Positions 1,228 through 60,372 of a DNA stretch of 64,000 nt are shown here, piece after piece. The first letter of the stretch is position 1, and each line of letters begins with the position of its first letter. Below the pieces are notes generated by a model. It was given only the letters and a program-made list of their open reading frames with translations, was not told the DNA's origin and searched no databases. The stretch lies in the IMG/VR virus record IMGVR_UViG_3300049215_000529, positions 1 to 64,000 of that record, one strand, 5' to 3'. Both the position numbers and the translations under genes were made by a program.

Positions 1228-1299
1228 ATTAGTACACTTTCGCAGCTAGGTGTCATTATTTATGCGCCATTATACACTCATACCCTGTAATTACGCCCC

Positions 1300-1327
1300 T
1301 TGACTACAATTTTTTAGGATTTATGAT
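1300..1327 (+). promoter_or_regulatory. Sigma70-type promoter for the CCA-adding enzyme, probably leaderless mRNA
   Basis: TTGACT (1300-1305), 16 nt, TATGAT (1322-1327), then 6 nt to ATG 1334; no SD. Confidence 0.6.
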
Positions 1328-1333
1328 GGCGCC

Positions 1334-2569
1334 ATGTTAAATTCTAAACTTTTTCAAAATCTGATTCATCCTCAGGCTATTGAAGTATGTCGCATACTTA
1401 ACGAGGCGGGGCATCAAGCCTACCTAGTAGGTGGTTGTGTGCGCGATTTGTTCTTAGGTGTTCAACCAAAAGACTGGGATATTACAACAGATGCAAGCCC
1501 TCAAAAAGTACTGAGCCTATTTCCTAAAACATATCCTACTGGATTACAGCATGGTACTATCACAGTTGCCATGGGTGAAGGTGTTCAAAATCATTTCGAA
1601 GTGACCACATTTCGAATTGAAGGAGAATACAAAGACGGAAGACGTCCAGAAGAAGTGTTTTTCGTGATGAATGTCGAGCAAGATTTAGCAAGACGAGACT
1701 TAACCATCAATGCCATTGCTTATGATCCATTGTCACATGAAATTGTTGATCCTTATCAAGGCGTTGAAGATTTAAAACGAAAAATAATCAAAGCTGTTGG
1801 TAATCCTAAATCCAGATTTCAAGAAGATGGACTTAGAATCATGCGTGTAGCTAGATTTGCTGCACGTTTTGGTTACAGCGTAGATGGAGAAACGTTTAAA
1901 GGTATGGAAGAGAGCTTAGAAACTCTCGAAAAGGTCTCTAAAGAGAGAATTAGCGATGAATTGTGTAAGACTTTGATGACAGCTCAACCATCTTATGGTT
2001 TACAACTGCTTTTGAAGTCGGGTGCTTTAGATATTGCTTGTCCTTTGCTGGCAGGACGACAATTACCTCTGTTAGCTCATCAGGATCGTGTTAAAGGTGA
2101 GCTAGAAACTCGCCTTGCCTTCCTGTACAACAAGATTCCGGCACATGAAGTCAATGCAGAGCTGTTTAATCTAAAACTTTCTAATAAGGAAATCAAAAAG
2201 GTGGTCTTTTTATTGGAAATTTTGGAGCGGTTTGCTACTTTTCAAGCTAAAGACACGCCGTTAGCCTATAAGAGCTTTATGGCAGTCATCAAAAATCATG
2301 CTCCTGAGCCCTGGCAACAGGTACTAGAGCAATTTATAGAGTTGTCTGAAGTCCTTGGCACCCCATCTAGGGCGCTCCTCGCCAAGTACAAGACAGAAAT
2401 CGTGTATTCAAAGAAGGAAATGCAGATAAATGGAAATGATTTGATGGAAGCGGGTATTCCTGCCGGTCCTAAGTTGAAAATAGCTTTAGATGAATGCTAC
2501 AATGAAATTTTGCGTCATCCCGAACACAATACCAAGTCTTATTTGCTAGAAGTGACTAAGAAGCTTTAA
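1334..2569 (+). CDS. cca: CCA tRNA nucleotidyltransferase (class II)
   Basis: GGCVRD, DWD catalytic carboxylates, EVTTFR plus flexible loop EGEYKDGRRP, RRDLTINA, EDGLR templating motif, C-terminal INGNDLM..GIPAGP tail. Confidence 0.9.
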   Translation: MLNSKLFQNLIHPQAIEVCRILNEAGHQAYLVGGCVRDLFLGVQPKDWDITTDASPQKVLSLFPKTYPTGLQHGTITVAMGEGVQNHFEVTTFRIEGEYKDGRRPEEVFFVMNVEQDLARRDLTINAIAYDPLSHEIVDPYQGVEDLKRKIIKAVGNPKSRFQEDGLRIMRVARFAARFGYSVDGETFKGMEESLETLEKVSKERISDELCKTLMTAQPSYGLQLLLKSGALDIACPLLAGRQLPLLAHQDRVKGELETRLAFLYNKIPAHEVNAELFNLKLSNKEIKKVVFLLEILERFATFQAKDTPLAYKSFMAVIKNHAPEPWQQVLEQFIELSEVLGTPSRALLAKYKTEIVYSKKEMQINGNDLMEAGIPAGPKLKIALDECYNEILRHPEHNTKSYLLEVTKKL

Positions 2570-24515: not shown

Positions 24516-26375
24516 TTAGGCTGGAGGTGGGACTGCTGGTGGAGGTCCGCCTGGAGGAGGTGCTGCCTCTCCGCCGCCTGGAGGAGGTGCTGGGGGAGGA
24601 GGTGCTCCGCCACCACCGCCTGGAGGTCCGCCTAAATCTAATCCTGGTAAGCCTGTTGGAGGAGGTGGTGGGGCTCCGCCGCCACCTGGAACTTCTCCTG
24701 GTACGCCACCTTCACCTGGTGGAGCTTGTCCTGGAATGCCGCCTTCTGGTTCTGGAATTTCATCTTCCTCATCCAAAGCTCTTAGAGAGGTCAAATCCAT
24801 AGCATCCAAAGCCACTTTTTCCTTGTTAGTGATAGCTTGTTGAATAGCTTCCTTGCGCATCTTCCTTACTTCATCTTCGAATTCTAGACCCATAGAGCGA
24901 TACAAGGTATGCAAAGATGCTCTCTTGGACTTTTCATCTCCTTGAGTTAGAGTAACCAAAGTGTTGATGTAGTCTCCTGCATCGAACAAGGACATATGAT
25001 TCCAGTCAATATCTGGAACGATTAATTGCTTTTCGCCACCAGAGTAGTCGTAGAATCCTTGAATCTTAGAGATTGGCGCAAAGACTTTTCTCTTTAGCCA
25101 TTGAGACATCATGTTACGGAATTGCATGTAACGTTGTCTCAAAACGTCTAGAGCAACACCGCCGTTTGCATAGGTAGTATCAGCTCCACCATCCATCAAT
25201 ACTGGTGGAACTTGTAAACCAACATAGATTTCCTTGATGATTTGAGTGATATCACCAGAAATATCGTAAATACCTTGACCGTAACCAACTCTTTCTACAG
25301 CTACACCCTCATGGGTGAAAATTTTGAAGTCCTTGTCATATTGAGCTTCTTCGAAAACATTTCTCCAAGCTTCAATGTCAGCAAAGGTTGGCTTATAGTT
25401 TTCTGATCCAATCTTAACCAAAGTCAATGGATTAATCATGTTGTCAGCTTGAGCATACTTGGATTCTCTAAGCTTGTCGAATAACATCAATTGGCGGAAA
25501 ATACAGACTGGAAGACCAGTTCCTCTGATTTCATATGGGCTAATTCTACGTGCCAAATGACTGACATGGAAATTATCTAGTGGAATGTTTTCGCCACGCT
25601 TAACCGAATCAATGATATGATTGTTAAGTTGTTTGCGTTGTTCAATATCAGTTGTGCGATTGGAGAAAATGATCTTCTTCAAATTTTCGTCGGGACGCAA
25701 CATGATGATTGGCTCATTGGCTACCACTGTGCGTTTTACAATCATATAGTCTGGGTTTTGAATAAGAACACGGCTCCACTTGCCACGGCTTTCATCTAGC
25801 TCAGCATAAACAAATGCTTCACCTAACAACCAATATTCCTGCGCAATTTGAACGCAAATGTTCATCAAGTCAATCTCTTCAATCATGTCATTGAAGAATT
25901 TCTCAATTTCTTTGTTAGGGCACTTTATGTTAAGCTTGCTGATTGGGTATGTGCTGTGAAGATTGATAGCGTTATGAACGAATGGATTCAAAGCATAAAA
26001 GCTACGGCACCAGGCGTTGATAGTAGCTCTATCACGAGGAAGATTGAGGTTGCTGTTAAGCCATAGTGGAGAATATACTTCTGGTGTTTGTTTGATAGAA
26101 TCGCCATGAATGCCACGGAACATGCCGCCGACACTGCTGACAGCTTGACCGTACTTTTTCATACCAACAGAAGCAGCAACTACTGAATTAGCAGTCTGAC
26201 CAAATTCTTTAACATTAGGTCCAGAACCATCTCTAAATAGACCTTGCTCTACTTCTTCAGATAATCCGTCTCTTCTAAATTGTGATACGCCTTGAGCCAT
26301 AAGGGCACTTACTTGCGGAACAGTCGATCTGTTTTCTAAATACTGTTCTGACTTGGACTTTTTTAAACCAGACAT
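24516..26375 (-). CDS. Portal protein with poly-Pro/Gly C-terminal tail
   Basis: Follows terminase; NPFVHNAINLH, YWLLGEAFVY, HLARRISPYEIRGT, GLQVPPVLM portal-like motifs. Confidence 0.8.
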   Translation of the reverse strand: MSGLKKSKSEQYLENRSTVPQVSALMAQGVSQFRRDGLSEEVEQGLFRDGSGPNVKEFGQTANSVVAASVGMKKYGQAVSSVGGMFRGIHGDSIKQTPEVYSPLWLNSNLNLPRDRATINAWCRSFYALNPFVHNAINLHSTYPISKLNIKCPNKEIEKFFNDMIEEIDLMNICVQIAQEYWLLGEAFVYAELDESRGKWSRVLIQNPDYMIVKRTVVANEPIIMLRPDENLKKIIFSNRTTDIEQRKQLNNHIIDSVKRGENIPLDNFHVSHLARRISPYEIRGTGLPVCIFRQLMLFDKLRESKYAQADNMINPLTLVKIGSENYKPTFADIEAWRNVFEEAQYDKDFKIFTHEGVAVERVGYGQGIYDISGDITQIIKEIYVGLQVPPVLMDGGADTTYANGGVALDVLRQRYMQFRNMMSQWLKRKVFAPISKIQGFYDYSGGEKQLIVPDIDWNHMSLFDAGDYINTLVTLTQGDEKSKRASLHTLYRSMGLEFEDEVRKMRKEAIQQAITNKEKVALDAMDLTSLRALDEEDEIPEPEGGIPGQAPPGEGGVPGEVPGGGGAPPPPPTGLPGLDLGGPPGGGGGAPPPPAPPPGGGEAAPPPGGPPPAVPPPA

Positions 26376-26433
26376 GGAACCTCATTTTCCACTATACCCT
26401 ATACTATACTCAACTAATAATATATCGAGTTAT

Positions 26434-28296
26434 TTAAAACTTACGAGGCATATACCCGCTAGCTACAAGTGGTTTTTTGATTTGTTGATAGTTTTGTTGC
26501 TGAAGAATTGGATTATTATTGCTAAATCCGTTTGTTATTAGGAATTTATAAGCAATGTATGCATTCAATAATGCCATAAAACCATCGTTTGGAGTACTTC
26601 CTTTAACATAATGAACACTTGGATCTCCGCCCCTTGAAATTGCTGGTTTAATCTCCATACTAGTACAATGCTCAATTAACCAAGCTACTTTTTCATAATC
26701 TCCAAATGGAAATCTAATCATTCCCTTTTTCATTTGTTCATATAATTCACCAATATAATAATCTCTTTCAAAAACTATTTCTTTTGGAAATGCCTCTTCA
26801 GTATACTTAACGTGACCATTAACTCTATTATGAGCGCGAGAAACTAGATAGCGGTCGCCATAGGTATTATGTAAAATTGCAGAAAAGTCATTAGAGTAAC
26901 CAATATCTCCTACTGCCAACTGAATGCTGTACTGCCTCATAATCTGATCGATGATTCCCTTTTTACTTTCCAAATCATTACGCCTAAACTTAGTTGCAAA
27001 CTCAATAGATAGTAGTCCAGGACCAGATACCTGCAAAACTACGGCAGTACTGTAAGATTGTCCTACAGCTTTAACTTTATCTGGATTAGCTAGTTGTTCC
27101 AAGTCGGAACGTGCGCCATAGTCTATTCCAACGACGATGATATTATCTTGAGACTTCTCAATGCGGGCGGAAAATTTTCTACCAACATCAGCACATTTAT
27201 CTCTAATTTCTTCTGGAGTAATAGGGCTAGAATCTCCCTGAAAGAACTCACCCAACACTTCGTTTTGAAATACGCGTTCAGTATTGATTGGATGAACGCC
27301 AGGCATTTCATTCAAGATATCTTCTTTACTGAACATAGGCATGTAAAGCTGGTTTATATGAAACCCAATCATTAAACAATCTTCATCGTCAGAATTCTTA
27401 AGAGCAACCCACTTACCGCGCTCGGCAGCTTCGCGCTTATCTTGTTCATGTCCACAGTGAGTGCATTTGACGACGAAGCCATGCAACCAAATTTTCTGCC
27501 AATCATCAGAGCCAGGAGTATAAAGTGGGAAATGCTCTTTACATTGCTCACAGCCTAAGTAATAATACTGTTGGGAAGATGTTTGCCACATCTTGTAGAA
27601 ATCGGAACCCTTACGACGTGGCGTTCCAAAATACACCTGCACACCCTTAGATGGCTTACCATACTTAGCAGTGGTAAGAACTTTGAGGGAGTTACCGATT
27701 GCCATTCCAGTAGTCTTCTGAACTTCGTCAAAGAAAATAACGTCAGCAGTACGACCCATGATGCGGTCGCCGTCAAGTCCAACCGATTCTACCCACAAAT
27801 GGTTGCCGCCAACAAATTGCTTGAAGTGCAAAGAGTCGCTAGTAGCCGTAGATTGATCTAGTAGAACCTGCATACAAGACTTGGCTTTACCAGTCTTCTT
27901 CTCTTGACCAACAGCAGGAACAGCAGTAACGATGATTTGATTAAGTTTAGTTTTAGAGTAAGCGGCAGCCAATTCTAATTGAGGAAAGGCATGGATAACT
28001 CTAATTGGAGGTTTCTCGCCAATACCAAAAATTCCTGAGCCCATGAAATACATTTCAAGGGCGCTTGCCATAGTAGTAGCTCCGACCTGACGACCTTTAA
28101 CCATGATAACTGGCTTGGCGTTAGGCTCTAAAGCTTTAATTCCAATGTAACGATAAATGTCGGCAAAAGGTCGATAGCCATTGCCCTCTAATCTAAATGG
28201 TTTACCATCTAATGTTAAATTGAGCTGGCAAAATGTTACTGGGTCAAGACTGAGAAGTTGTTTCTTAAGTTTTTCAAAAAGCTCTTTATCGTCCAT
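26434..28296 (-). CDS. Terminase large subunit (lambda GpA-like)
   Basis: KGRQVGATT Walker A, IFFDEVQ Walker B, GTP coupling motif, CxxC Zn ribbon, VGIDYG nuclease. Confidence 0.9.
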   Translation of the reverse strand: MDDKELFEKLKKQLLSLDPVTFCQLNLTLDGKPFRLEGNGYRPFADIYRYIGIKALEPNAKPVIMVKGRQVGATTMASALEMYFMGSGIFGIGEKPPIRVIHAFPQLELAAAYSKTKLNQIIVTAVPAVGQEKKTGKAKSCMQVLLDQSTATSDSLHFKQFVGGNHLWVESVGLDGDRIMGRTADVIFFDEVQKTTGMAIGNSLKVLTTAKYGKPSKGVQVYFGTPRRKGSDFYKMWQTSSQQYYYLGCEQCKEHFPLYTPGSDDWQKIWLHGFVVKCTHCGHEQDKREAAERGKWVALKNSDDEDCLMIGFHINQLYMPMFSKEDILNEMPGVHPINTERVFQNEVLGEFFQGDSSPITPEEIRDKCADVGRKFSARIEKSQDNIIVVGIDYGARSDLEQLANPDKVKAVGQSYSTAVVLQVSGPGLLSIEFATKFRRNDLESKKGIIDQIMRQYSIQLAVGDIGYSNDFSAILHNTYGDRYLVSRAHNRVNGHVKYTEEAFPKEIVFERDYYIGELYEQMKKGMIRFPFGDYEKVAWLIEHCTSMEIKPAISRGGDPSVHYVKGSTPNDGFMALLNAYIAYKFLITNGFSNNNPILQQQNYQQIKKPLVASGYMPRKF

Positions 28297-28324
28297 GGCA
28301 ATATTTCAGAATATTGCCATGGAC
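28291..28324. repeat. Perfect 15-bp inverted repeat containing both divergent start codons
   Basis: GTCCATGGCAATATT-TCAG-AATATTGCCATGGAC. Confidence 0.95.
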
Positions 28325-28852
28325 AAGAAAAAACGTGGACCTTACACCTATGAAGGAAAAGACTGTATACATTGTCTTAGACCTTTAACAAAAGATAACA
28401 CCAGACCAAGTGATATACAACAGGCTAATTATTTATGTATTAGCTGCACTAAAGCTAAAGGTAAACGCAGATATTTTGAAAGAAAAGAGTTAATTAGAGA
28501 GCAGCAAAGAGAATACGATCTTGAAAATAAAAGAAAGGTCATAGAAGCTTATGGTAGCATGTGCACTTGTTGTGGCGAAACTATTTTAGAATTTTTAACA
28601 ATTGATCACACTCATAATGATGGGGCGGAAGATAGAAAAAAGAATGGAAAGAAAACGGGCGGCAAACTTTATCGTTGGCTAATTCAAAATAATTTTCCTA
28701 AAGATAAATACCAATTGCTTTGTTTTAATTGCAATTGTGCAAAAGGTTTCTTTGGATATTGTCCACATAAGAAGCCAGAAGTTATTATTAGAGTAACTAG
28801 GAAGAAGATTAATCCTTCACTGGGGTCAGAGCGTGAAACGCATCAGTATTAG
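28319..28852 (+). CDS. HNH-family endonuclease inserted on the opposite strand
   Basis: CTCCGE, LTIDHTHNDG, LLCFNCN; N-terminal CxxC pairs; likely start ATG 28319 (track 28181). Confidence 0.8.
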   Translation: MDKKKRGPYTYEGKDCIHCLRPLTKDNTRPSDIQQANYLCISCTKAKGKRRYFERKELIREQQREYDLENKRKVIEAYGSMCTCCGETILEFLTIDHTHNDGAEDRKKNGKKTGGKLYRWLIQNNFPKDKYQLLCFNCNCAKGFFGYCPHKKPEVIIRVTRKKINPSLGSERETHQY

Positions 28853-29462
28853 ATGGGTCAATCTCTGTATCAGATCCAGTATCACGAGAGCCTAAGTTAC
28901 TGTAGCTTTCATAACTTGCTGGGTTGTTCTTCTTAGCCTCTAAATTCATCTTACTAACCAATCTAATTAAATTATCGTCGTCCCAATCCTTGGCATCAGA
29001 GACGTCAGATTTGTGAATGGATCTGATTTTCTCAATGATTGCTGGAACTGGTAAATTGCCCTTGCTGTCTCTAATATAGTTCTCTAAAGTTTTGTGAATC
29101 TGTGGCATCTTCTTGAGAACGATTGGAATCATGTCAACTTTCTTTTCCATAGCATCATTTTGATCCGATGCTACTTTAGTTTTGACAGATACATTCTCAT
29201 CAGCAGATTGCTTGATTTTGTCTAGATAAGCAGACAATCCACTTCTTTCCTTCATATCTTCTACTGCTGCCTCTACAGAAGGATACTTTGATTTTCCATT
29301 CATGATGGAATTAATTTGATCAAACAAAGAGTTCTCAATAGTGCGAGGTTGTACAGCACCCTTCTCCAACTTTCTTTGAAATTGGCGAAGCCAGTGATCC
29401 TCATCAATGCTGGAATCAGCCTCTCTCGAAACTACTGGTTGGTGTCTGGTATACTTGGACAT
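28809..29462 (-). CDS. Hypothetical head-module protein
   Basis: Likely start 29462 coupled to the upstream stop (track 29480); TKVASD motif. Confidence 0.55.
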   Translation of the reverse strand: MSKYTRHQPVVSREADSSIDEDHWLRQFQRKLEKGAVQPRTIENSLFDQINSIMNGKSKYPSVEAAVEDMKERSGLSAYLDKIKQSADENVSVKTKVASDQNDAMEKKVDMIPIVLKKMPQIHKTLENYIRDSKGNLPVPAIIEKIRSIHKSDVSDAKDWDDDNLIRLVSKMNLEAKKNNPASYESYSNLGSRDTGSDTEIDPSNTDAFHALTPVKD

Positions 29463-30406
29463 TATTTCTTCTCGCCCCAAATGTTTGCGCCGTTGTTGTA
29501 ATTAGCTGCCCAATCCATATTGTCGCTATCCTCAACATGCAAATCTTGATCTGGCATGAAGCCTCTGTCTTGACGAACGGCATAACCCATGTCCATCAAA
29601 AGTTGCATTACTTCAGCTTGTTCGCGCTTGTTTAGATTATAGTACTTGACTTGTCTGTCAAACAAATCCTCAATGTCATGACCTGCAGAAACCATTCCGT
29701 TAATACAGACTCGGGCAATTCTTGAAGTCAATAGTGGTGCCACGATGTAGATGCCCTGAACTCCGGTTACCTTTTGTGCTTCTTTAACAATGCCATCAGG
29801 CTCGAACTCGGACTTCTTCTTGCGGCTGGTCTTCTTGTGTTTCTTTACTTTGTCAAGACGATCGTGTAGTCTCTCAATACCATTATCAATGGTGGCTCTG
29901 ACTTTTTCAATTTGGTCTGCATCTAATTCGCCATCCAAATCCAATCTCATTGCCTTGGAAATTTCGTTATCTAGTCTGTCTAGATAAGCGACTGCTCTCT
30001 CAAGTCCTGCGGTATCATAACCGGAATGCTTTGGAACATCATCACAACGTTCTTTAACCCAAGCAATAAAACCTTTGGCGCCTCTAGATTCCCAATCCCA
30101 CTTAGGATCCTTTTTGGATTTCTTAGCATCATTGTCATCGATATTGTCTTTATCGTCTTCGTGAACTTCAATGTGTGGCTCTGGCTCAGGGTCATGGGTG
30201 CCTGGAGGAGCGCCGGGAAGATCTTCAATTACAATAGAAATTTCGCCCGGTTCGCCTACTTCAAGTGGAGACATGGTAGCCTCAGCTGGATGATCTGGAT
30301 GTACCTCGGAAACTTCCAATGGTACCAGTTCCATAGGACTTCCGCCCATTGGCATTCCACCTGATGGGTCAACAACTAGTAATTGTGCTTCTGACTGTAG
30401 TGACAT
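29462..30406 (-). CDS. Hypothetical head-module protein
   Basis: 314 aa, GAGG SD, acidic N-terminus, VKEAQ motif. Confidence 0.55.
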   Translation of the reverse strand: MSLQSEAQLLVVDPSGGMPMGGSPMELVPLEVSEVHPDHPAEATMSPLEVGEPGEISIVIEDLPGAPPGTHDPEPEPHIEVHEDDKDNIDDNDAKKSKKDPKWDWESRGAKGFIAWVKERCDDVPKHSGYDTAGLERAVAYLDRLDNEISKAMRLDLDGELDADQIEKVRATIDNGIERLHDRLDKVKKHKKTSRKKKSEFEPDGIVKEAQKVTGVQGIYIVAPLLTSRIARVCINGMVSAGHDIEDLFDRQVKYYNLNKREQAEVMQLLMDMGYAVRQDRGFMPDQDLHVEDSDNMDWAANYNNGANIWGEKK

Positions 30407-30470
30407 TTAGATACCTCTAGAACGGGTTTTCATATATCTGTATGCCTTTATATGTAATAATAGCCGTAGG

Positions 30471-31577
30471 TTAAATATTCCATTTATCTTCATACATAGT
30501 GATTCCGACATCTGTTGTGCCGTAATCTGGGTTAATATTCGTTGGATTTCCTAAATCTTCATCTGGCAAGTCTACTCCATCTGGCAATCCAAACAAGCCA
30601 GAGGTAGGGGCTGGATTCAAATACTTATCTATTAAATTCTTAACTTTTTCAGAATCCATCTTAGGCTCATCGCCAGTATAATCGCGCCCGAAATCTAGCT
30701 CAGCCGGGGTTTTATCCTCGGAGTCATTTTGAGGCAGGTACTTGTCTAGCAAGCCGCCTATCTGGGCAGAGTAAGGATAGCTCTCGGAATCTCCTAAATT
30801 AACTGATTCAGGAGAAATTGAGGTATCTGGTTCGCCAGTAGGACCTAACTGAATAGGGCTGTTGTAGGACTCGGAATCTCCCAAGATAGGACCTGACCCA
30901 ATATTTTCATCAATTGGATAATCTATAGAATGCACATCATGTTTCTTCTTAGGAGCCTTAGGCACTCCTTGATATGGGCTATTCTTCCAGTCATAGATTG
31001 AAGTTCCATGCTCTTTGGGAGGCAGCATATGATCTTCATTATCGTCAGCAAAGAAAGCGCCTGGGCTCTTATGTGGAGCATCTGTAATAGTCTTTATCTT
31101 CTTACCTTCACTCATCGCAGTATAGGCACCATCACCATAATCAAAGTTTGGACCATCATTGTCATCGCCCTTAAACTTGTCATTTAACTTATGAACCAGA
31201 CTCATGCCTGGCATACGGGCTTGTTTAATAATTTTTTCAAAAATGGAAGCCCTAGCTTGACGTTCAGGATTTTTCTTTACACGATTACCATTATCCATTT
31301 GCCAAGAATCATCGGCAACATAACGTGGTTTTAGACGTTCACGACGGGCATCCAAAAACTCTTTAACACTTTTGTAATTTTGCAGACCATGCCAGCCAGT
31401 TCCTGGACCGACGTGCTCCATTCCCGGAATTGTATACAAATCGTAGTTGCGATAAAATGGTTCCTCGAAACGAGGTTGCACCACGATTGCAGGATCTGAT
31501 TTGTATTTCTTTTTTCCAGGTGTTGGTTCATTAGGTCCGCCGTCGCCTTGAAAATATGCTTTTTTATTTGGGCACAT
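30471..31577 (-). CDS. Acidic, largely disordered head-module protein
   Basis: N-terminal KKAYFQGDGGPNEPTPG matches the protease repeat. Confidence 0.55.
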   Translation of the reverse strand: MCPNKKAYFQGDGGPNEPTPGKKKYKSDPAIVVQPRFEEPFYRNYDLYTIPGMEHVGPGTGWHGLQNYKSVKEFLDARRERLKPRYVADDSWQMDNGNRVKKNPERQARASIFEKIIKQARMPGMSLVHKLNDKFKGDDNDGPNFDYGDGAYTAMSEGKKIKTITDAPHKSPGAFFADDNEDHMLPPKEHGTSIYDWKNSPYQGVPKAPKKKHDVHSIDYPIDENIGSGPILGDSESYNSPIQLGPTGEPDTSISPESVNLGDSESYPYSAQIGGLLDKYLPQNDSEDKTPAELDFGRDYTGDEPKMDSEKVKNLIDKYLNPAPTSGLFGLPDGVDLPDEDLGNPTNINPDYGTTDVGITMYEDKWNI

Positions 31578-39337: not shown

Positions 39338-39408
39338 ATTGAACCCCTATAAAGTAGAGACTGAATCAGAATATATCAATGATAAGGGTTTGGAATTAAA
39401 GTAAATTC

Positions 39409-42011: not shown

Positions 42012-42033
42012 ATTAGGTAATATATCGAACAAA

Positions 42034-49166: not shown

Positions 49167-52100
49167 TCAGTCGTCAGGGTTTTCTTCCTCTAAATCAATC
49201 AGTCCCTCATCATATAAAGAGTCTTCAATGCGTTCCAATAAGTCTTTGGGATCCTTAGACTTTTTGCTCTTTTCTTGCGTGATTTTAGCTTTAGCTTCTT
49301 TCAAATTTATCTTTTTAGCTTTCAAGTCAGCCGGAAGCGCTGGAATGCAAGCTACATCAAACAAATCGTCTAAAATCACGCCCATATCATCTTCATAATT
49401 ATTGGTGTTTCCAGCGAAGCTCAAAGCTACACCAACATCGAATTCGGCTTTACTATTGACTTCTTTGATACGATCTTGGACTGTCTTCCAGCGATCTGGA
49501 AAGATAGTACATCCGCATTGGTCACCATTGGCGTCTTCTATAACCGCTTTGATCATAGATTGACCATAATATTTACTGGTCTCTTTCTTTACCTTGAATT
49601 CAAAATAACTTCTAATAATTGCTTTGATTGGAGCTAACTTAGTCTTATCTTTAGACTTCTTGATATCATAAACTGTCTTATGTGTATCTTTGAAAAATTT
49701 ACCATATGCATCAGCTGGTTTACAAACAAATGATTCAGCAAGATAAAATTGTTCAAGTGCATATAGTTCAGAGATTTTCCAATCTGGCTCACTTGGCCAA
49801 GGATAAACAAACTCTTCAAGATTTGGATTATGCTTCTTCAACCATACTTGTAATTTCTTCCTATAATCGGAGCAGTACAAGAACAGAAGCTTTCTTGGAA
49901 TCTTAAAAGAATCCATAGCTCCTGCAGCTGCCAATGCTTGAATGCTGTTCGCACGCACTTTCTTAGAATCTACACGCGCCATGAAATCGAAGAAGCTCTT
50001 GAAGGGGCGCTTCTGGATAATGTCTTTGATAGCGTCTTCTCCTACGAACTTTAGGGCGTCCAAACCGGTCAACAGCTTATTGCCGTCCGAAATAGTATAA
50101 GTTAATTGTGAGGTATTGATATCCGGTGGCAATAACTTGACGCGATGACCTCGAAGCTCCTTCTTGATCTTCTCAATGTTGCTCTTGGAGTCGGGAGCAT
50201 TAGATCTGACTTCTGCCATTAAGTTTGCCAATAAAAACTCTATTGGGAAGTTGGCTTTCAAGAAAGCGGTCTTGTATCCAGTCATAGAATACAACACAGC
50301 ATGAGAGACGTTGAATCCGTAGCCTTGAAACTTGTCAACTACTTCATCCCAAATACGCTGAGCGATAGCTTCTTGTACACCATTCTTAACGGCATCTGCA
50401 ATGAATTCCGATCTCCATTGCTGTGCTTTTTTTGGATTCTTGCCCTTTTCCTTAGTCAGTTTGCGCAAGCGATCTGCAGAGTGAAGGCTCCATCCTGCGA
50501 CGTCCTGAGCCAAATACATCAAGCACTCTTCATATAAACCGAAGCCATAAGTGCTATTGAAAGCTCTGCCTAGCTTTGGATGTAGCAGAGTCATCTTCTT
50601 CTCTCCATCCCTGGTTTTGATGAAGTCGTTGCGCATGTCGCGGGCGGATGGTCTCGCCAAAGCGTTGATGTTTGCCAGGTCATTGATGTTGGCTGGTTTG
50701 ATGCGACGGCACAAATCAATGGTACCTCCACTGGTACCTAGCTGGAAAACACAGAAAGTATCACCGCTCGTAATTAGATCATAAGATGGCTTATCATAAA
50801 CATCATAATCGATGATGAAGGGAGGTGGCACCTTTCCGCGTTCGCGGATGATTTTGTAAGTCTCACCAATAATGTCTAGAGTAGCTAATCCTAAGGTATC
50901 CATCTTGACCAAACCATTTTCTTCCGCTTTTTCTTTATCGTACTCGATAGCTAGGGCGCCGTCCTTATCTTTTCGTAACGGAACCAAACCAGTCAGGGGA
51001 CGGGCAGAAATGATAATACCACCAGCGTGAGTGGACCAAGCTCGATACTTGCCACAAATATCCTTGTACTTTATGAACTCTGGATATCTTTTGCAGTACT
51101 CTGAAAATAGTGGAACCTTAGTAAAAGCGTCATCGATGGAATGGATATCTGATGGAATACAATCTGCTACTTCATTGCCAATTTCAATGGCTCGTTCACG
51201 GGACCCACCAAGTTCGCAGGCTCTAGAAATATCTCGGACATAAACTTTTGGTGTGATAGTGTTTACGTTAGATACGTGAGCTACATGATCTTCACCATAT
51301 TTTTTACGTAAGTACTCCTGCACGCGCACGCGTCCAGACGGAGCAAAGTCAGTATCAATATCTGGGAAACTGGACTTTTCCTTGTTGTGAAAACGAGCAA
51401 AAATCAAATCATACTTAATAGGGTCTGCTTGGTGAATTCCTAGAAGGAATGCAATTAGCGAACCTCCTACAGAGCCTCGACCATCGCCCACAGCAATATC
51501 ATTTTTGCGAGCCCAGTCAATGTAGTCAGCCACAATCAACATGTAGCTTGAGAAGCCATGAAATTCGATAACGTCCAACTCTTCTTCTAATCGAAGATTA
51601 TATTGAATACGCTTCTCATCATTCAAGTCTTTGATACGAGACTCAAAAAACTTTTGACAATGAAATCTTAGAAACTGTTTATCTTCCTCTAGTTTCTTTA
51701 CAGCATCATCCTGATGAATCGCCCACTTTAGAAATTCTGCATAGTCTGGCTCGTCCTTTACCGGGAAAATTGGCAGCTCTTTGCCGCTTGGATTGGAGAA
51801 CTTTGGATCAATCCAATCTGGTTTCTCACACATGTCCGCAAAGTACAAAGTGTTAGCGCACAGCTCTTCTGCATAAGCCTCGCCATAGTTTCTAGTAAAG
51901 AATGCTTTTACCTCGTCGCCCGTCTTCAAATAAAATTCAGGAACTGGATAACGCAAACGATAGTTGGAGAACACTGGCTGATGTGAACCAATTGCCAAAA
52001 ATACGTTATGAACGTCTGAATCTTCTTTCTTCGCATAGTGAGCATTGCATGCTGGCACTACTTTGACACCATGAATCTTTCCAAGATCAATTAAACGCCT

Positions 52101-52685
52101 GTTCAAAAACTGCTGATCAATTTCATCATTGAAAATATTGGAACCACGCTTCATATTGTTTGGCTGAATCTCTAGCCCCAAATTATCTCCAAACAATGAT
52201 TTGAGTTTCAGTATAGTTTTTTCTGCCTCATCGAACTTTTTATTCATTAGCAATTGGCTAACAATACCATTGCCGCATGCAGTTAAGCAAATGAGACCTT
52301 CAGAGTATTGTTCTAATAATTTCCAGTCTATGATTGGATAGACTCGCTTACCTAAAAACGAACCCTGGTCAAATCCCTTTTTGTTTAGCGTGAGCAGATT
52401 ACGGTAGCCTGTAGCATTTTTAGCAAGCAACACTACATGTCTAAACTTTTCTTCTACGTGGGTAGCGTCATCCACGAAGTAGCATTCACAACCCATAATC
52501 AATTTGACACCAGTATCTTTTGCGGCTTTCATGGCATCCCATGCGCCAGCAAGTGTTCCGTGGTCTGTTATGGCTAATGCTGTCTGCCCAAGTTCTTTGG
52601 CTCGTTGAAACAGAGCCTTAGGCGATACTAAAGAATCGAGAATAGAAAAATCGGTTTGATTATGTAATGAAACAAAATCCATCAT
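49167..52685 (-). CDS. dnaE: DNA polymerase III alpha subunit
   Basis: PHP domain (LHNQTDFSILD, ITDHG), GRGSVGGS, PDIDTDF, KMDTLGL, YGFNVSH; uninterrupted. Confidence 0.95.
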   Translation of the reverse strand: MMDFVSLHNQTDFSILDSLVSPKALFQRAKELGQTALAITDHGTLAGAWDAMKAAKDTGVKLIMGCECYFVDDATHVEEKFRHVVLLAKNATGYRNLLTLNKKGFDQGSFLGKRVYPIIDWKLLEQYSEGLICLTACGNGIVSQLLMNKKFDEAEKTILKLKSLFGDNLGLEIQPNNMKRGSNIFNDEIDQQFLNRRLIDLGKIHGVKVVPACNAHYAKKEDSDVHNVFLAIGSHQPVFSNYRLRYPVPEFYLKTGDEVKAFFTRNYGEAYAEELCANTLYFADMCEKPDWIDPKFSNPSGKELPIFPVKDEPDYAEFLKWAIHQDDAVKKLEEDKQFLRFHCQKFFESRIKDLNDEKRIQYNLRLEEELDVIEFHGFSSYMLIVADYIDWARKNDIAVGDGRGSVGGSLIAFLLGIHQADPIKYDLIFARFHNKEKSSFPDIDTDFAPSGRVRVQEYLRKKYGEDHVAHVSNVNTITPKVYVRDISRACELGGSRERAIEIGNEVADCIPSDIHSIDDAFTKVPLFSEYCKRYPEFIKYKDICGKYRAWSTHAGGIIISARPLTGLVPLRKDKDGALAIEYDKEKAEENGLVKMDTLGLATLDIIGETYKIIRERGKVPPPFIIDYDVYDKPSYDLITSGDTFCVFQLGTSGGTIDLCRRIKPANINDLANINALARPSARDMRNDFIKTRDGEKKMTLLHPKLGRAFNSTYGFGLYEECLMYLAQDVAGWSLHSADRLRKLTKEKGKNPKKAQQWRSEFIADAVKNGVQEAIAQRIWDEVVDKFQGYGFNVSHAVLYSMTGYKTAFLKANFPIEFLLANLMAEVRSNAPDSKSNIEKIKKELRGHRVKLLPPDINTSQLTYTISDGNKLLTGLDALKFVGEDAIKDIIQKRPFKSFFDFMARVDSKKVRANSIQALAAAGAMDSFKIPRKLLFLYCSDYRKKLQVWLKKHNPNLEEFVYPWPSEPDWKISELYALEQFYLAESFVCKPADAYGKFFKDTHKTVYDIKKSKDKTKLAPIKAIIRSYFEFKVKKETSKYYGQSMIKAVIEDANGDQCGCTIFPDRWKTVQDRIKEVNSKAEFDVGVALSFAGNTNNYEDDMGVILDDLFDVACIPALPADLKAKKINLKEAKAKITQEKSKKSKDPKDLLERIEDSLYDEGLIDLEEENPDD

Positions 52686-58149: not shown

Positions 58150-60372
58150 TCACCAAGAGGAGACTACTCTCGCCTTGGATACCATGTTAGTGTCTTGCTC
58201 AACCAATATAGCGTGCGAGAATTTATCTTTTAAACGATCATTGTGGGTGATGACTAGAATGTTGTAATCTTTTTGGAAAAACTTAATGATATCAGCAAAA
58301 GCATCTATGCTAGCTTTATCTAAAGATTGATCTATTTCATCCAATAAAAGCAATTGAACATTTACATCTAGCATTTTCTGTAGCAAGAAAGATAGTCCAA
58401 GCTTGAGAGCGAAAGAAACGGCAAGTTTCATAGCTCCTGACAATTGCTCATAGTACCTCTCTCTACCATTGACGGTATAATTAATGTCTAGAGTATCTGC
58501 TTGGTCGCCAGTTTTTTCTACGGTCTTTTCCACCGAGAAAGATAATTGAAGCCCTGGCTTTAACTGAGATAATAGGTTATTAGCTTCTACCTGCAAGTCA
58601 TCCAGAACATTTTGGATGATGAGATTAGGGATACCAGTTGTAGAGAAGGCTTGTACAACTGACGGGTACACTACGAACTTTTCTTCCAAATCTACCAAAG
58701 ATTTAGTTAACTCATTCTTCTTTGCCTTGTTCTTAGTTTTCTGATCGATATTATTTTGAATAACCGCTTTGTTATTATTAAAGTGGTTGATTTCCTTATT
58801 AAGAGTAGTGACAGTTGTCATTACGGCAGCAATTTTTTGCTTTTCAACCTGAATCTGTTCCTTGAGCAACTTTGCCTCATCTAAAGAAGAGTCCTTCAAT
58901 AAATTAGAAACCTCTTCCAGTTCCTTAATCTTATCTGTTAATTCAGCAGTGAATTTAGCATGCAACTCTTTGTACTCGTCATGAAGCGCGCCCTTGTCTT
59001 GCAACTCTTTGGTCTTAGCAGTAATTTGCGTGTTAACATCTTCCAATTGCTTTTTGGATAGCTTGAGACTGTTAATGGTTTGTAAATGAGTAGTAATTTC
59101 TGCATTGAGGGCTGCAATATTTTTCTTGGCTTCTTGAATATTTGCTTGACAAACTTTCATCTCATTAGCAATGCGCGTTTTCTCTTCTTTGCGATGTTTA
59201 TCTGTCATTGGTTGACGACAACGATCACAATAACTCTCATCGGGGAAAGGTACCTTGAGCTTTTCAGTGTCTGCCAAATTAGTCCTAATATTGACATTGT
59301 GCTGGGTGACAATCTCTTTTTTCTTTTCAACTTCTTCGTTCAAAATATCGATTTGAGAATAGTCTATCGTAGCCAGTTTAACTTGATTGTCTTTGAGAGA
59401 CTTGATTTCTCCAACTAACTCATTAGCCGACTTGATAACGTTGGACTTTTTTGACTGATACTCTTTGACGGATGTTTCTAGTTTGGAGCGGTCAGCAGTC
59501 AACTGGCGCTCGTTTGCCAATAAAGAAGCAAATTTACTCTCTATATTTGCATGGGCGGTTGTTAGTTCATTCACCTTCTGGGTGTAGCCTTCTATTTCAG
59601 ATTGACAGTCTGCAAGGACTGCACCCTTTTCATTCAAGCTCTGCTCTACTGATACCAGCTGCTTTGCCAGTTCGAGCAACTCTTTGTCTGGATCTCCCAA
59701 AGTTTCAAGCAGAGTTTTATGTCTTTCGATTTCTTTAGAAATGACATTAGCCTTATCTTTAGCCATTTGACATAGCTTAGTGTAAATGATAAGGTTGAGG
59801 GGTTCTTTTAAAATGCCCTTTCGCTTCTCAGCAGTAACTGTGGATAGACCAGACAGATCATTTTGTACGAAATGATATGTGCTACGAAATGACTTATAAT
59901 TAATCTTGACTAACTTAGCCAAATCTTTTTCGGTATCACCTGAGCGACTGCCAGATAGGTTCTTCCAGAATTTTTCTGTTACCTTCTTGTCAATCCAAGG
60001 TTCCTCGGTTGCAGAGTAATATACTTCTTCCTCTGTGCCTGGCGTACCATTTCTCTCCAATAATACTAAATTGGTACTGCCCTTCTTGGTTCTGGTTCGC
60101 GCGATACGATACTCTTGATCTCCAATCAGGAAGTCAAACACAATTTTACAAGAGGCAGAATCGTCTCTAATAATTTTTTCTAAGTTGATGTCTGCATGAT
60201 TGAATAGTACATATTCAATAGCTTTAAAGATTGTAGTCTTACCTACACCGTTTGCGATTAGTTCATTGTTCTCAGCTTTGCCCACAAGAAGGGCGGCGCT
60301 AAATTGTGTAAAATCGATAAACGCCTTATCATAGCACATGAAGTTGTCAATGTACAGTCTAACTGGCTTCAT
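58150..60372 (-). CDS. sbcC: SbcC/Rad50-like ATPase
   Basis: NGVGKTT, coiled coil with CDRC hook, LSGA signature, LLLDE, ITH. Confidence 0.88.
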   Translation of the reverse strand: MKPVRLYIDNFMCYDKAFIDFTQFSAALLVGKAENNELIANGVGKTTIFKAIEYVLFNHADINLEKIIRDDSASCKIVFDFLIGDQEYRIARTRTKKGSTNLVLLERNGTPGTEEEVYYSATEEPWIDKKVTEKFWKNLSGSRSGDTEKDLAKLVKINYKSFRSTYHFVQNDLSGLSTVTAEKRKGILKEPLNLIIYTKLCQMAKDKANVISKEIERHKTLLETLGDPDKELLELAKQLVSVEQSLNEKGAVLADCQSEIEGYTQKVNELTTAHANIESKFASLLANERQLTADRSKLETSVKEYQSKKSNVIKSANELVGEIKSLKDNQVKLATIDYSQIDILNEEVEKKKEIVTQHNVNIRTNLADTEKLKVPFPDESYCDRCRQPMTDKHRKEEKTRIANEMKVCQANIQEAKKNIAALNAEITTHLQTINSLKLSKKQLEDVNTQITAKTKELQDKGALHDEYKELHAKFTAELTDKIKELEEVSNLLKDSSLDEAKLLKEQIQVEKQKIAAVMTTVTTLNKEINHFNNNKAVIQNNIDQKTKNKAKKNELTKSLVDLEEKFVVYPSVVQAFSTTGIPNLIIQNVLDDLQVEANNLLSQLKPGLQLSFSVEKTVEKTGDQADTLDINYTVNGRERYYEQLSGAMKLAVSFALKLGLSFLLQKMLDVNVQLLLLDEIDQSLDKASIDAFADIIKFFQKDYNILVITHNDRLKDKFSHAILVEQDTNMVSKARVVSSW

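What the first reader, a model, noticed from the sequence alone, without database searches (positions are those of the whole stretch)
28291..28324. Perfect palindrome joins the start codons of terminase and an inverted HNH gene
Seen: GTCCATGGCAATATT-TCAG-AATATTGCCATGGAC. Both divergent genes begin with the identical AATATTGCC-ATG-GAC (TerL MDDK..., HNH MDKK...), the ATGs are 22 nt apart, and neither has an SD. Inference: the HNH insertion duplicated the terL start in inverted form. Any read-through transcript would fold a 15-bp hairpin burying the AUG, so translation would need an internal start or unwinding. Known analogy: hairpins occlude T4 homing endonuclease initiation regions on early transcripts. 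A dimeric regulator site is an alternative.
Basis: partly seen in the sequence, partly recalled or inferred. Interest (0 to 1): 0.66.

Follow-up and report, generated by a model that had tools for sequence, protein, structure and literature searches.

The report
Mirror-image start cassette joining terL and HNH
A perfect 34-base palindrome that holds the start codons of a jumbo phage's terminase gene and of an inverted selfish nuclease gene is real, recurs in a dozen related phages, and keeps re-perfecting itself; it most likely serves as a two-way promoter and start cassette.

Summary
Window 28291-28324 is a perfect palindrome with 15-bp arms and a 4-nt loop. About 0.001 such palindromes are expected by chance in 64 kb. 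Each arm holds one start codon: terL on the minus strand and an HNH nuclease gene on the plus strand, with 22 nt between the two ATGs.

The window belongs to a 204-kb record of a jumbo phage from a moss metagenome. Among 69 related loci, 38 have no gene at this site and 29 have an inverted HNH gene, so the HNH gene is a mobile, free-standing homing-endonuclease gene.

Twelve distinct loci carry the window's HNH type. All keep the design CAT-N22-ATG, with CATGG, ATAT, ATAT and CCATG invariant. Six are perfect palindromes, of four different sequences. Sister loci differ by paired compensatory changes, and the window's loop is inverted relative to its sister. The arms therefore evolve in concert, which is the signature of template switching.

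Each arm carries an AT box resembling a recurrent promoter-like motif of this phage, GATATAT(A/T). My best reading is two overlapping divergent promoter and start cassettes. Only read-through RNA would carry both arms and fold (about -22 kcal/mol) over the AUG, as in T4. No transcription-start data exist, so this mechanism is inferred.

I rate it a new variant of a known kind, of moderate interest.

The parts
28291..28324 (.). Perfect palindrome: 15-bp arms and a 4-nt loop. It is the head-to-head junction of terL and the HNH gene.
   Evidence: It is conserved in design in 12 loci.
28291..28305 (.). Left arm. It contains the terL start codon (28296..28294, minus strand) and terL codon 2.
28306..28309 (.). 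Loop TCAG. It is the reverse complement of the loop CTGA in the sister locus L085, that is, a spacer inversion.
28310..28324 (.). Right arm. It contains the HNH start codon (28319-28321) and HNH codon 2.
28297..28305 (+). AT box GGCAATATT pointing towards the HNH gene, 13 nt before its ATG. It is the putative promoter element of the HNH gene. In five relatives this box is GGATATATT or GGATATATC, which contains the recurrent motif GATATAT.
   Evidence: The promoter function is inferred.
28310..28318 (-). AT box GGCAATATT (read on the minus strand) pointing towards terL, 13 nt before its ATG. It is the putative terL promoter element and lies directly against the HNH start codon.
   Evidence: It is retained in the HNH-less loci L046 and L049. 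The promoter function is inferred.
26434..28296 (-). terL, the large terminase subunit (620 aa, GpA-like ATPase).
   Evidence: GpA_ATPase, 3.5e-13; phrog_675, 7e-55. 110 relatives in IMG/VR.
28319..28852 (+). Free-standing HNH (endonuclease-VII-like) homing-endonuclease gene, 177 aa. It has an N-terminal CxxC...CxxC finger and a C-terminal D-H...N...N motif with four zinc cysteines.
   Evidence: Presence/absence polymorphism.
28295..28297 (+). Upstream in-frame ATG of the HNH frame, inside the left arm, overlapping the terL ATG by 2 nt. It adds 8 codons. It is not conserved as an open frame in relatives, so it is probably not the start.
28306..28320 (-). Mirror-image mini-frame on the terL strand (ATG at 28320..28318, four codons, then the stop TGA formed by the loop).
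   Evidence: Read.
28809..29462 (-). Upstream late-operon gene of unknown function ('up223'). In HNH-less relatives it ends 5-70 nt before terL. Here its 3' end overlaps the HNH 3' end by 44 nt (28809-28852).

Best explanation
The palindrome is the conserved head-to-head junction between terL and an inverted, free-standing HNH homing-endonuclease gene. That gene has invaded the short space between terL and the preceding late gene in a clade of jumbo phages.

Each arm is one copy of a small expression cassette: an AT box (G-N-W-ATAT-N), then CC, then ATG, and often the second codon.

Most likely working (inferred): the AT box in the far arm acts as the promoter of each gene. Transcription would then start about 7 nt downstream of the box, in the loop or near arm. 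The resulting mRNA would have a leader of about 6 nt, no SD and only one arm, so it could not fold.

RNA that reads through the whole palindrome carries both arms. An example is transcripts from the upstream late operon, which run antisense through the HNH gene. Such RNA folds into a hairpin of -22 to -31 kcal/mol with the AUG in the stem and is silent for translation. This is the T4 design used for I-TevI, segB, mobE and genes e and 49, applied here symmetrically to two divergent genes.

The terL box lies directly against the HNH start codon. The insertion cut terL off from its former operon, so the HNH gene's 5' end has become part of terL's expression signal. This would hinder clean loss of the selfish gene.

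The perfect symmetry is not a relic of one insertion. It is renewed by templated, hairpin-guided copying between the arms (template switching, possibly during the break repair that homing provokes). This homogenises and extends the arms and occasionally flips the loop.

Shown: the junction, its conservation, the concerted change of the arms, the mobility of the HNH gene, and the recurrent AT-box motif.
Inferred: promoter activity, transcription start sites, and translational silencing by the hairpin.
For: Mobile HNH gene:
- 38 of 69 loci are empty at this site, 7 carry the window's HNH type, 22 carry other HNH types and 2 carry other inserts.
- The nuclease motif and zinc cysteines are invariant in 14 homologues. 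Pfam, PHROG and fold hits are weak but consistently HNH or endonuclease VII.

Conserved design:
- 12 distinct loci have CAT-N22-ATG, with 18 invariant positions.
- The pattern occurs in only 10 contigs of IMG/VR: 9 are this junction and 1 is a chance hit inside an unrelated gene.

Concerted evolution:
- The covariation score is 0.19-0.25 against 0.08-0.10 in shuffles (0 of 500 shuffles reach it), and 87% of cells are paired against 31-47% when the partners are slid.
- Sisters L087 and L089 differ by two compensatory double changes. L089 and L091 differ by mirrored changes in codon 2 of both genes. The window's loop TCAG is the reverse complement of its sister's CTGA.
- Arm homogenisation and spacer inversion are the published signatures of template switching (PMC8604942, PMC8794818, PMC7202029).

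Promoter-like AT box:
- GATATAT(A/T) is enriched 4-8 fold in the intergenic DNA of this genome.
- It sits either exactly 7 nt before the ATG with no SD (8 genes, 2.9% against 0.4% in controls), or 25-45 nt upstream with an SD in between.
- The same spacing peak and a strand bias occur in relatives. In G001, 8 of 20 matches have a gap of 7, the strand split is 18:2, and the control gives 1:1.
- The other HNH type at this site has GATATAT(N)+7 nt+ATG.
- Five loci of the window's type have GGATATATT or GGATATATC pointing at the HNH gene.

terL needs a new promoter:
- In empty loci terL follows the upstream gene within 5-70 nt, often with an SD.
- No terminator lies between that gene and terL here.
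- The HNH-less loci L046 and L049 still keep the far-arm box.

Hairpin: all 12 junctions fold with both AUGs in the stem, at -9 to -25 kcal/mol.

T4 precedent: PMC2988022.
Against: - There are no transcription-start data. The RNA runs hold only a 257-nt piece of terL, and only as contigs.
- The window's own boxes (GCAATATT) differ from the motif consensus at two positions.
- The 13-nt spacing from box to ATG is shared by only two or three other genes.
- A variant box, GGNAATAT, is only about 3-fold enriched in intergenic DNA.
- Six of the 12 loci have 1-3 mismatches in the arms. One homologous locus (L090) has lost the palindrome and one (L092) has a different junction. Two other HNH types at the same site have no such palindrome. 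The hairpin is therefore not required for divergent expression of HNH and terL.
- There is no strand-specific G-U signal that would point to an RNA role (87.2% against 87.8% paired).
- Template switching alone could maintain the symmetry without any selection on it.
- Translation of mRNAs with leaders of about 6 nt and no SD is assumed, not shown.
Confidence: 0.42

Rival explanations
1. The symmetry itself has no function. Only the two start codons and the AT boxes matter. The perfect palindrome is a mutational by-product: an ancestral imperfect inverted repeat is repeatedly 'corrected' and extended by template switching, helped by frequent break repair at a homing hotspot. No hairpin or cruciform plays a role.
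For: - Half of the loci tolerate 1-3 mismatches, and L090 has lost the repeat.
- Other HNH types at the same site work without it.
- There is no strand bias in G-U pairs.
- Mirrored changes reach into codon 2 of two unrelated proteins, which is easier to explain by copying than by selection.
- Other perfect short palindromes lie around these loci, in L038 and L079.
- The literature describes arm homogenisation, arm expansion and spacer inversion, and raised quasipalindrome mutagenesis during break repair (PMC8604942, PMC13100816, 10.1101/2023.08.09.552703).
Against: Perfect versions arose at least four times with different sequences and have persisted. All 12 loci keep a foldable stem over both AUGs. 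The 22-nt spacing and 18 positions are invariant at 50-60% protein identity. This argues for selection on at least part of the element.
Confidence: 0.27
2. The palindrome is an operator for a dimeric DNA-binding protein. This could be a phage late regulator, or the HNH protein acting as its own repressor the way I-TevI binds an operator over its late promoter. The protein would control both divergent genes at once.
For: - The half-sites are symmetric and invariant (CCATGG and ATAT) at fixed spacing.
- The HNH protein has an N-terminal CxxC...CxxC finger.
- Autorepression by T4 homing endonucleases at operators resembling their homing site is documented (PMC2988022).
- The pattern is unique to this junction in IMG/VR.
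Against: - Positions that vary still co-vary between the arms (C:G, T:A, G:C). Protein contacts do not demand this, but base pairing or templated copying does.
- No candidate regulator has been identified.
- The L094 homologue has lost the catalytic D-H yet keeps the junction. That is compatible with a binding-only role but does not test it.
- The motif does not recur elsewhere in the genome as a regulon would.
Confidence: 0.15
3. The hairpin on the read-through late transcript is an RNA processing site, of the RNase III type. Cleavage would cut terL mRNA free from the antisense-HNH RNA and so activate or stabilise it.
For: - The terL-sense RNA folds into 15-17 perfect pairs, extendable to about 24 pairs (-30.9 kcal/mol).
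- No terminator separates the upstream operon from terL.
- In L085, L088 and L094 the terL-sense stem is 4-5 kcal/mol more stable than the HNH-sense stem.
Against: Overall there is no strand asymmetry. In L086 and L143 the opposite strand folds better. The stems are at the short end for RNase III. No Rfam family matches.
Confidence: 0.08
4. The palindrome acts at the DNA level as a cruciform or hairpin, as a target of the endonuclease-VII-like HNH, as a packaging signal at the terL start, or as an assembly artefact.
For: The centre is AT-rich, which favours extrusion. The HNH protein shows weak similarity to T4 endonuclease VII. The site lies at terL.
Against: - An artefact is excluded by independent assemblies and by 11 other loci.
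- A nuclease cutting its own genome at its own promoter would be self-destructive.
- The HNH gene is absent from most relatives that package normally.
- The arms are short for extrusion or for SbcCD-type attack.
Confidence: 0.05

Closest known systems
T4-type translational control of homing endonuclease genes and late genes (I-TevI/II/III, segB, Aeh1 mobE; also e, soc and 49): a hairpin hides the start region on long transcripts, and a late promoter inside the hairpin gives translatable RNA (PMC2988022)
   Same: A selfish nuclease gene sits among essential phage genes. A stable stem covers the initiation region on read-through RNA. An AT-rich, -10-only type box lies in the 5' arm, where it would start transcripts that lack that arm.
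   Different: Here the stem pairs two start codons of two divergent genes, one of them the essential terL. There is no SD to sequester, so the AUG itself is paired. The element is a perfect DNA palindrome that evolves in concert. Promoter use is not shown.
Free-standing homing endonuclease genes of T-even phages (seg and mob genes), including the antisense-oriented segD between genes 23 and 24, and host promoters embedded in endonuclease genes (PMC2988022; PMC10448857)
   Same: An intergenic insertion next to a conserved essential gene, with presence/absence polymorphism among relatives. The host gene's expression signals are entangled with the endonuclease gene. A neighbouring intein in terL of some relatives shows the same hotspot behaviour.
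   Different: Most T4 examples are co-oriented and lack their own promoter. This one is inverted and shares a 22-nt mirror-symmetric control region with its neighbour.
Quasipalindrome correction by replication or repair template switching (PMC7202029, PMC8604942, PMC8794818)
   Same: Multi-nucleotide changes raise arm complementarity. Arms extend into flanking (coding) sequence. The spacer inverts between close relatives.
   Different: That process is usually described in cellular genomes or in single reporter loci. Here it acts on a phage regulatory junction containing two start codons. Whether break repair during homing drives it has not been tested.
HK97-type packaging HNH proteins encoded next to terminase genes
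   Same: An HNH gene lies adjacent to terL.
   Different: Those genes are conserved, co-oriented parts of the packaging operon. This gene is inverted, absent from 38 of the 69 informative related loci, and replaced there by other HNH types. It is therefore not a fixed packaging component.

Membership tests
HNH (beta-beta-alpha-Me) endonuclease, endonuclease-VII-like zinc subtype | Catalytic His with a preceding Asp, downstream Asn residues, and four zinc-binding cysteines flanking the motif | tested here: met
   D96-H97 are present in 13 of 14 homologues. N137 and C82, C85, C135 and C138 are invariant in all 14.
HNH (beta-beta-alpha-Me) endonuclease, endonuclease-VII-like zinc subtype | Significant match to the family profile or fold | tested here: inconclusive
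   Pfam Endonuclease_7 scores 19.7 bits, below the 23.6 cut-off. PHROG endonuclease VII gives 8.5e-8. The model has pLDDT 81. The best fold matches are almost all HNH domains, but with Z no higher than 4.1 and Foldseek E no lower than 0.16. A PDB sequence search found nothing.
Free-standing homing endonuclease gene | Presence/absence polymorphism at one site between otherwise collinear relatives | tested here: met
   38 loci are empty and 29 are occupied by an HNH gene, out of 69. The flanking genes are conserved.
Free-standing homing endonuclease gene | The enzyme cleaves the empty allele near the insertion site and is copied in by repair | not testable with these tools
   This needs purified protein and mixed-infection crosses.
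T4-type hairpin plus internal promoter control | A stable structure covers the initiation region on read-through RNA | tested here: met
   The fold is -21.9 kcal/mol (z = -7.6) and -24 to -31 kcal/mol with flanks. All 12 loci fold with the AUG in the stem. This is an in silico result only.
T4-type hairpin plus internal promoter control | A promoter inside the structure, so that its transcripts lack the 5' arm | tested here: inconclusive
   An AT box in each 5' arm resembles the recurrent motif GATATAT(A/T). No start sites have been mapped.
Quasipalindrome maintained by template switching | Clustered changes that raise complementarity, and spacer inversion between relatives | tested here: met
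   two double compensatory changes between the sisters L087 and L089, and the loops TCAG and CTGA between the window and L085.
Rho-independent terminator | A GC-rich stem followed by a U tract | tested here: not met
   There is no terminator-like site in 27900-29600, and no T run follows either arm.
Sigma-70-type bidirectional promoter | -35 and -10 hexamers at 16-18 nt spacing | tested here: not met
   No consensus match lies at the junction. The genome's TTGAC-type promoters lie elsewhere.
Packaging HNH of HK97-like terminase operons | Conserved and co-oriented with the terminase genes in all relatives | tested here: not met
   The gene is inverted, absent from 38 of 69 loci, and represented by three unrelated HNH types at the site.

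The most novel reading that the evidence does not exclude
The mirrored cassette is a self-repairing 'promoter hostage' switch. The selfish HNH gene has placed terL's only promoter against its own start codon, and its own promoter against terL's start codon, so that neither can be deleted or mutated alone. Hairpin-templated copying keeps the two halves identical. The two overlapping promoters exclude each other, so the phage toggles between nuclease and terminase expression. In addition, every read-through RNA is silenced on both strands by the same stem.
Probability: 0.12. Interest if true: 0.8.

Novelty: new variant of a known kind. Interest (0 to 1): 0.52.

Why it matters
It would show a new way for a homing endonuclease gene to embed itself in an essential phage operon. 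The gene shares a 22-nt mirror-symmetric control region in which both start codons are part of one stem. It is also a natural, replicated example (12 loci, at least four independent 'perfectings') of template switching shaping a regulatory element.

The work also defines a candidate promoter motif, GATATAT(A/T), for an uncultivated clade of 200-450 kb phages from peat, soil and freshwater. The motif often lies exactly 7 nt before the ATG.

If only the mutational explanation holds, the case still warns that covariation in short inverted repeats next to homing sites need not mean a selected structure.

Tried and rejected
- A blastn search of 26000-30500 against 50,697 GenBank phages found nothing. 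No cultured relative is available.
- A locus search with the single HNH protein found only the window itself. An alignment was needed.
- The arm sequence does not recur elsewhere in the window beyond chance.
- More distant HNH homologues in other phages (L095-L142) show no start-codon palindrome. The feature therefore belongs to this junction, not to the nuclease family.
- Rfam gave only sub-threshold generic miRNA-hairpin hits.
- The sigma-70 and terminator scans found nothing at the junction.
- A PDB sequence search found nothing.
- Sequencing runs: all holders are kept as contigs. The two RNA libraries (probably one data set filed twice) hold only 27375-27631, so they give no information on starts, strand or the junction.
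- The test for strand-specific G-U pairs, which would indicate an RNA role, showed no difference between strands.
- The palindrome at 1313-1348 next to the other plus-strand gene is not analogous. It overlaps an ordinary TTGACT-N17-TATGAT promoter.
- I considered and rejected an assembly or amplification chimera, because many independent assemblies carry the junction, and a terminator, because there is no U tract.
Full report
**1. The observation**

Window 28291-28324 is a perfect palindrome. The arms are 28291-28305 and 28310-28324 (15 bp each) and the loop is TCAG. With two mismatches the repeat runs to 21 nt on each side. It is the best short inverted repeat of the window.

The left arm holds the start codon of a 620-aa minus-strand ORF (26434..28296, MDDKELF...). 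The right arm holds the ATG of a 177-aa plus-strand ORF (28319..28852, MDKKKRG...). Twenty-two nucleotides separate the two ATGs, and both genes read AATATTGCC-ATG-GAC.

From base composition I expect about 9e-4 perfect hairpins of this size in the window. Twenty shuffles gave longest arms of 8-11 bp. The 204-kb genome record has only one other hairpin with arms of 15 bp or more.

The sequence is not an assembly accident:
- Logan contigs of two runs cross 26400-30400 without a difference, although these samples may be the source of the window.
- A second IMG/VR record is identical at the junction.
- The same architecture appears in eleven further assemblies.

**2. The genes and the genome**

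The minus-strand gene is the large terminase (GpA_ATPase 3.5e-13; phrog_675 7e-55). The portal gene lies downstream of it.

The plus-strand gene encodes a small nuclease. It has a CxxC...CxxC finger and a D-H...N...N motif framed by four cysteines, and these features are invariant or nearly so in 14 homologues. Profile and fold matches are weak but point consistently to HNH or endonuclease VII domains:
- Pfam Endonuclease_7 scores 19.7 bits, below the cut-off.
- PHROG endonuclease VII gives 8.5e-8.
- The model has pLDDT 81, and the best structural neighbours are the Gme HNH nickase, Cas9 HNH domains, T4 endonuclease VII and Cap5, with Z no higher than 4.1.

The window is the first 64 kb of a 204-kb virus record rated 47% complete. 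Relatives reach 267-452 kb. The runs that hold the sequence are moss metagenomes. Nearly all genes lie on the minus strand.

**3. The HNH gene is a mobile insertion**

I fetched 80 loci encoding relatives of terL (69-84% identity). In 69 of them both terL and the upstream gene ('up223', window 28809..29462) are visible.
- In 38 loci the two genes are adjacent, 5-70 nt apart, often with an SD before terL.
- 7 loci carry the window's HNH type (family A).
- 22 loci carry other HNH genes. Family B is a two-domain form. A third type occurs in L054 and L079.
- 2 loci carry other inserts.

All HNH genes at this site are inverted relative to the operon. This is the pattern of a free-standing homing-endonuclease gene.

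The locus is a hotspot for selfish elements. Some relatives also carry a LAGLIDADG-type intein after the terL Walker-B motif, or further HNH genes downstream of terL.

In the window the HNH 3' end overlaps the 3' end of up223 by 44 nt. No terminator lies between up223 and terL. Late transcripts should therefore run antisense through the HNH gene into the palindrome. This last point is an inference.

**4. The palindrome is a conserved design that evolves in concert**

Using an alignment of family-A proteins I found 12 distinct family-A junctions in IMG/VR and JGI metagenomes. All twelve have CAT-N22-ATG. CATGG, ATAT, ATAT and CCATG are invariant, although the nucleases are only 51-69% identical.

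The same pattern occurs in only 10 contigs of all IMG/VR. Nine are this junction and one is a chance hit inside an unrelated gene.

Six junctions are perfect palindromes, of four different sequences:
- GGCAATATT in the window
- GGTAATATC in L087
- GGGAATATT in L089, L091 and L147
- GGTAATATG in L093

Six junctions have 1-3 mismatches. A further family-A locus (L090) has lost the repeat, and one (L092) has a different junction.

On a 15-17 pair structure, 87% of cells pair, against 31-47% when the partners are slid. Six to eight pairs show changes on both sides. The covariation score is 0.19-0.25 against 0.08-0.10 in shuffles, and 0 of 500 shuffles reach it.

On the HNH tree:
- The sisters L087 and L089 differ by two compensatory double changes.
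- L089 and L091 share the core but have mirrored differences in codon 2 of both genes.
- The window's loop TCAG is the reverse complement of the loop CTGA in its sister L085.

The commonest imperfect state has GGATATAT(T/C) on the terL side (five loci in three clades). The perfect versions therefore look like independent rewritings of that arm to match the other.

Arm homogenisation by multi-nucleotide changes, arm extension and spacer inversion are the described signatures of template switching at quasipalindromes (PMC8604942, PMC8794818, PMC7202029). Such events are also raised during break repair (10.1101/2023.08.09.552703). Break repair is what homing provokes at this very place.

Pairing is equally good on both strands (87.2% against 87.8%). 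There is thus no G-U signal for an RNA on one strand.

**5. The AT boxes resemble a promoter-like motif of this phage**

In the 204-kb genome, GATATA, TATATA and ATATAT are 4-8 fold enriched in intergenic DNA. About 25 intergenic copies of GATATAT(A/T) point at genes.

Their distance to the ATG is bimodal:
- Exactly 7 nt with no SD (8 genes, 2.9% against 0.4% for internal ATGs).
- 25-45 nt with an SD in between (portal and others).

This is what a -10-only promoter would give, producing leaderless or normally led mRNAs. A different, TTGAC-N17-type promoter precedes another set of genes.

The motif, its strand bias and the 7-nt peak recur in four large relatives. In G001 the strand split is 18:2, 8 of 20 matches have a gap of 7, and the control gives 1:1.

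Family-B HNH genes have GATATAT(N)+7 nt+ATG.

In family A each arm carries G-N-W-ATAT-N, 13 nt before the far ATG. In five loci the box facing the HNH gene contains the GATATAT motif. The box facing terL is GGNAATAT(Y) in most loci. That variant is about 3-fold enriched in the intergenic DNA of the genome. It is still present before terL in two HNH-less loci, L046 and L049, the latter with a remnant of the HNH start.

**6. How it most likely works**

The insertion separated terL from its operon, so terL needs a promoter. The only room for one is the 22-nt spacer and the first HNH codons.

I propose that each far-arm box starts transcription about 7 nt downstream of the box, inside the palindrome. 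The resulting RNA has a short leader, no SD and only one arm.

RNA that crosses the whole element folds with the AUG in the stem. The energy is -21.9 kcal/mol for the core (z = -7.6) and up to -30.9 kcal/mol with flanks in terL sense. All 12 loci fold this way, at -9 to -25 kcal/mol. Such RNA would be silent for translation.

This is the arrangement known for I-TevI, I-TevII, I-TevIII, segB, mobE and several late genes of T4 (PMC2988022). Here it is doubled and mirrored.

A corollary follows. The terL box abuts the HNH start codon, which entangles the selfish gene with an essential one. T4 promoters embedded in seg and mob genes do the same (PMC2988022).

None of this is shown. No start sites could be obtained, because the RNA libraries hold only a 257-nt terL piece, kept as contigs. 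The hairpin cannot be essential for divergent expression, since families B and C do without it and half of the family-A loci have mismatches.

I put 0.42 on this mechanism. The rivals are:
- 0.27 on 'the symmetry is only a mutational by-product'.
- 0.15 on an operator for a dimeric protein, including autorepression by the HNH protein as in I-TevI.
- 0.08 on an RNA processing site.
- 0.05 on DNA-level roles.

**7.

The description is exact, and the T4 analogy is apt.

Four points need correction:
- This is not a one-time duplication made at insertion. It is a conserved junction that evolves in concert.
- The direction of copying is not known.
- Lack of an SD is the rule here: 64% of genes lack one.
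- Transcription starting inside the palindrome is a simpler way out than internal starts or unwinding.

**8. Novelty**

I found no description of two divergent start codons paired in one conserved palindrome at a homing-endonuclease junction. The components are all known: a free-standing HNH gene, hairpin-plus-promoter control, and quasipalindrome correction. I rate it a new variant of a known kind, with interest about 0.5.

No genetic code other than table 11 was used.

Noticed in passing
L068:3432-6380 (also L069, L071, L072, L075-L079): terL of several relatives carries an in-frame insertion of about 360 aa directly after the Walker-B motif FFDE. It begins with Cys, ends with His-Asn followed by Cys, and has a LAGLIDADG-like block. 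This is an intein with a homing endonuclease. Together with three HNH types upstream and further HNH genes downstream, it makes terL a hotspot for selfish elements in this clade.
   Followed up: partly
G000:C1:65103-65137 (just beyond the window's end): This is the only other long perfect palindrome of the genome (17-bp arms, 1-nt loop). It lies immediately upstream of a cluster of AT boxes (GCAATATTA, CTATATAG, GATATATAGG) before the minus-strand gene starting at 65050. It may be an operator or terminator.
   Followed up: no
window and G000, e.g. 42012-42027, 26412-26427, 39363-39378; G000 64226-64241, 91478-91493, 114198-114213: The promoter-like motif GATATAT(A/T) recurs. It lies either exactly 7 nt before an ATG without an SD, which suggests leaderless mRNAs, or 25-45 nt upstream with an SD in between. 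It is conserved in relatives of 267-452 kb.
   Followed up: partly
window 1290-1348; G000 118301, 121074, 127061, 165470, 184521, 199092 upstream regions: A second promoter class looks like sigma-70 promoters with an extended -35 (CCTTGAC-N17-TAnnnT). One copy drives the plus-strand CCA-adding tRNA nucleotidyltransferase gene 1334..2569. The imperfect palindrome 1313-1348 simply overlaps it.
   Followed up: partly
window 24516-24800 (C-terminus of the portal gene 24516..26375, minus strand): The portal protein ends in a tail of about 90 aa made almost only of Pro, Gly and Ala.
   Followed up: no
window 58150-60372 (-), 49167-52685 (-): These genes encode an SbcC/gp46-like recombination nuclease subunit (phrog_77, 1.4e-64) and a large DNA polymerase (phrog_405, 3e-246). 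The phage thus has its own break-repair machinery, which homing and template switching would use.
   Followed up: no
window 28809-28852: The HNH gene and the convergent upstream gene overlap by 44 nt at their 3' ends. The C-terminal tails of the HNH homologues vary in length accordingly.
   Followed up: partly
L038:1429-1455; L079:3322-3347; L092 junction (L092:2380-2425): Other perfect short palindromes lie around the same site in relatives. One has 12-bp arms inside the zinc-finger codons of an HNH gene. One has 12-bp arms in the 39-nt spacer between a third HNH type and terL. One has 9-bp arms in the 46-nt spacer of a divergent family-A locus.
   Followed up: no
L016:4547-4963 (= L094): This family-A homologue reads K-S where all the others have the catalytic D-H, so the nuclease is probably dead. 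The junction is nevertheless kept, with one mismatch.
   Followed up: no
L049:1280-1330 and L046:2031-2080: Two loci without the HNH gene still carry both arms of the inverted repeat before terL. L049 even keeps a CCAT remnant of the HNH start. Either the gene was lost from them, or the repeat predates the insertion.
   Followed up: partly
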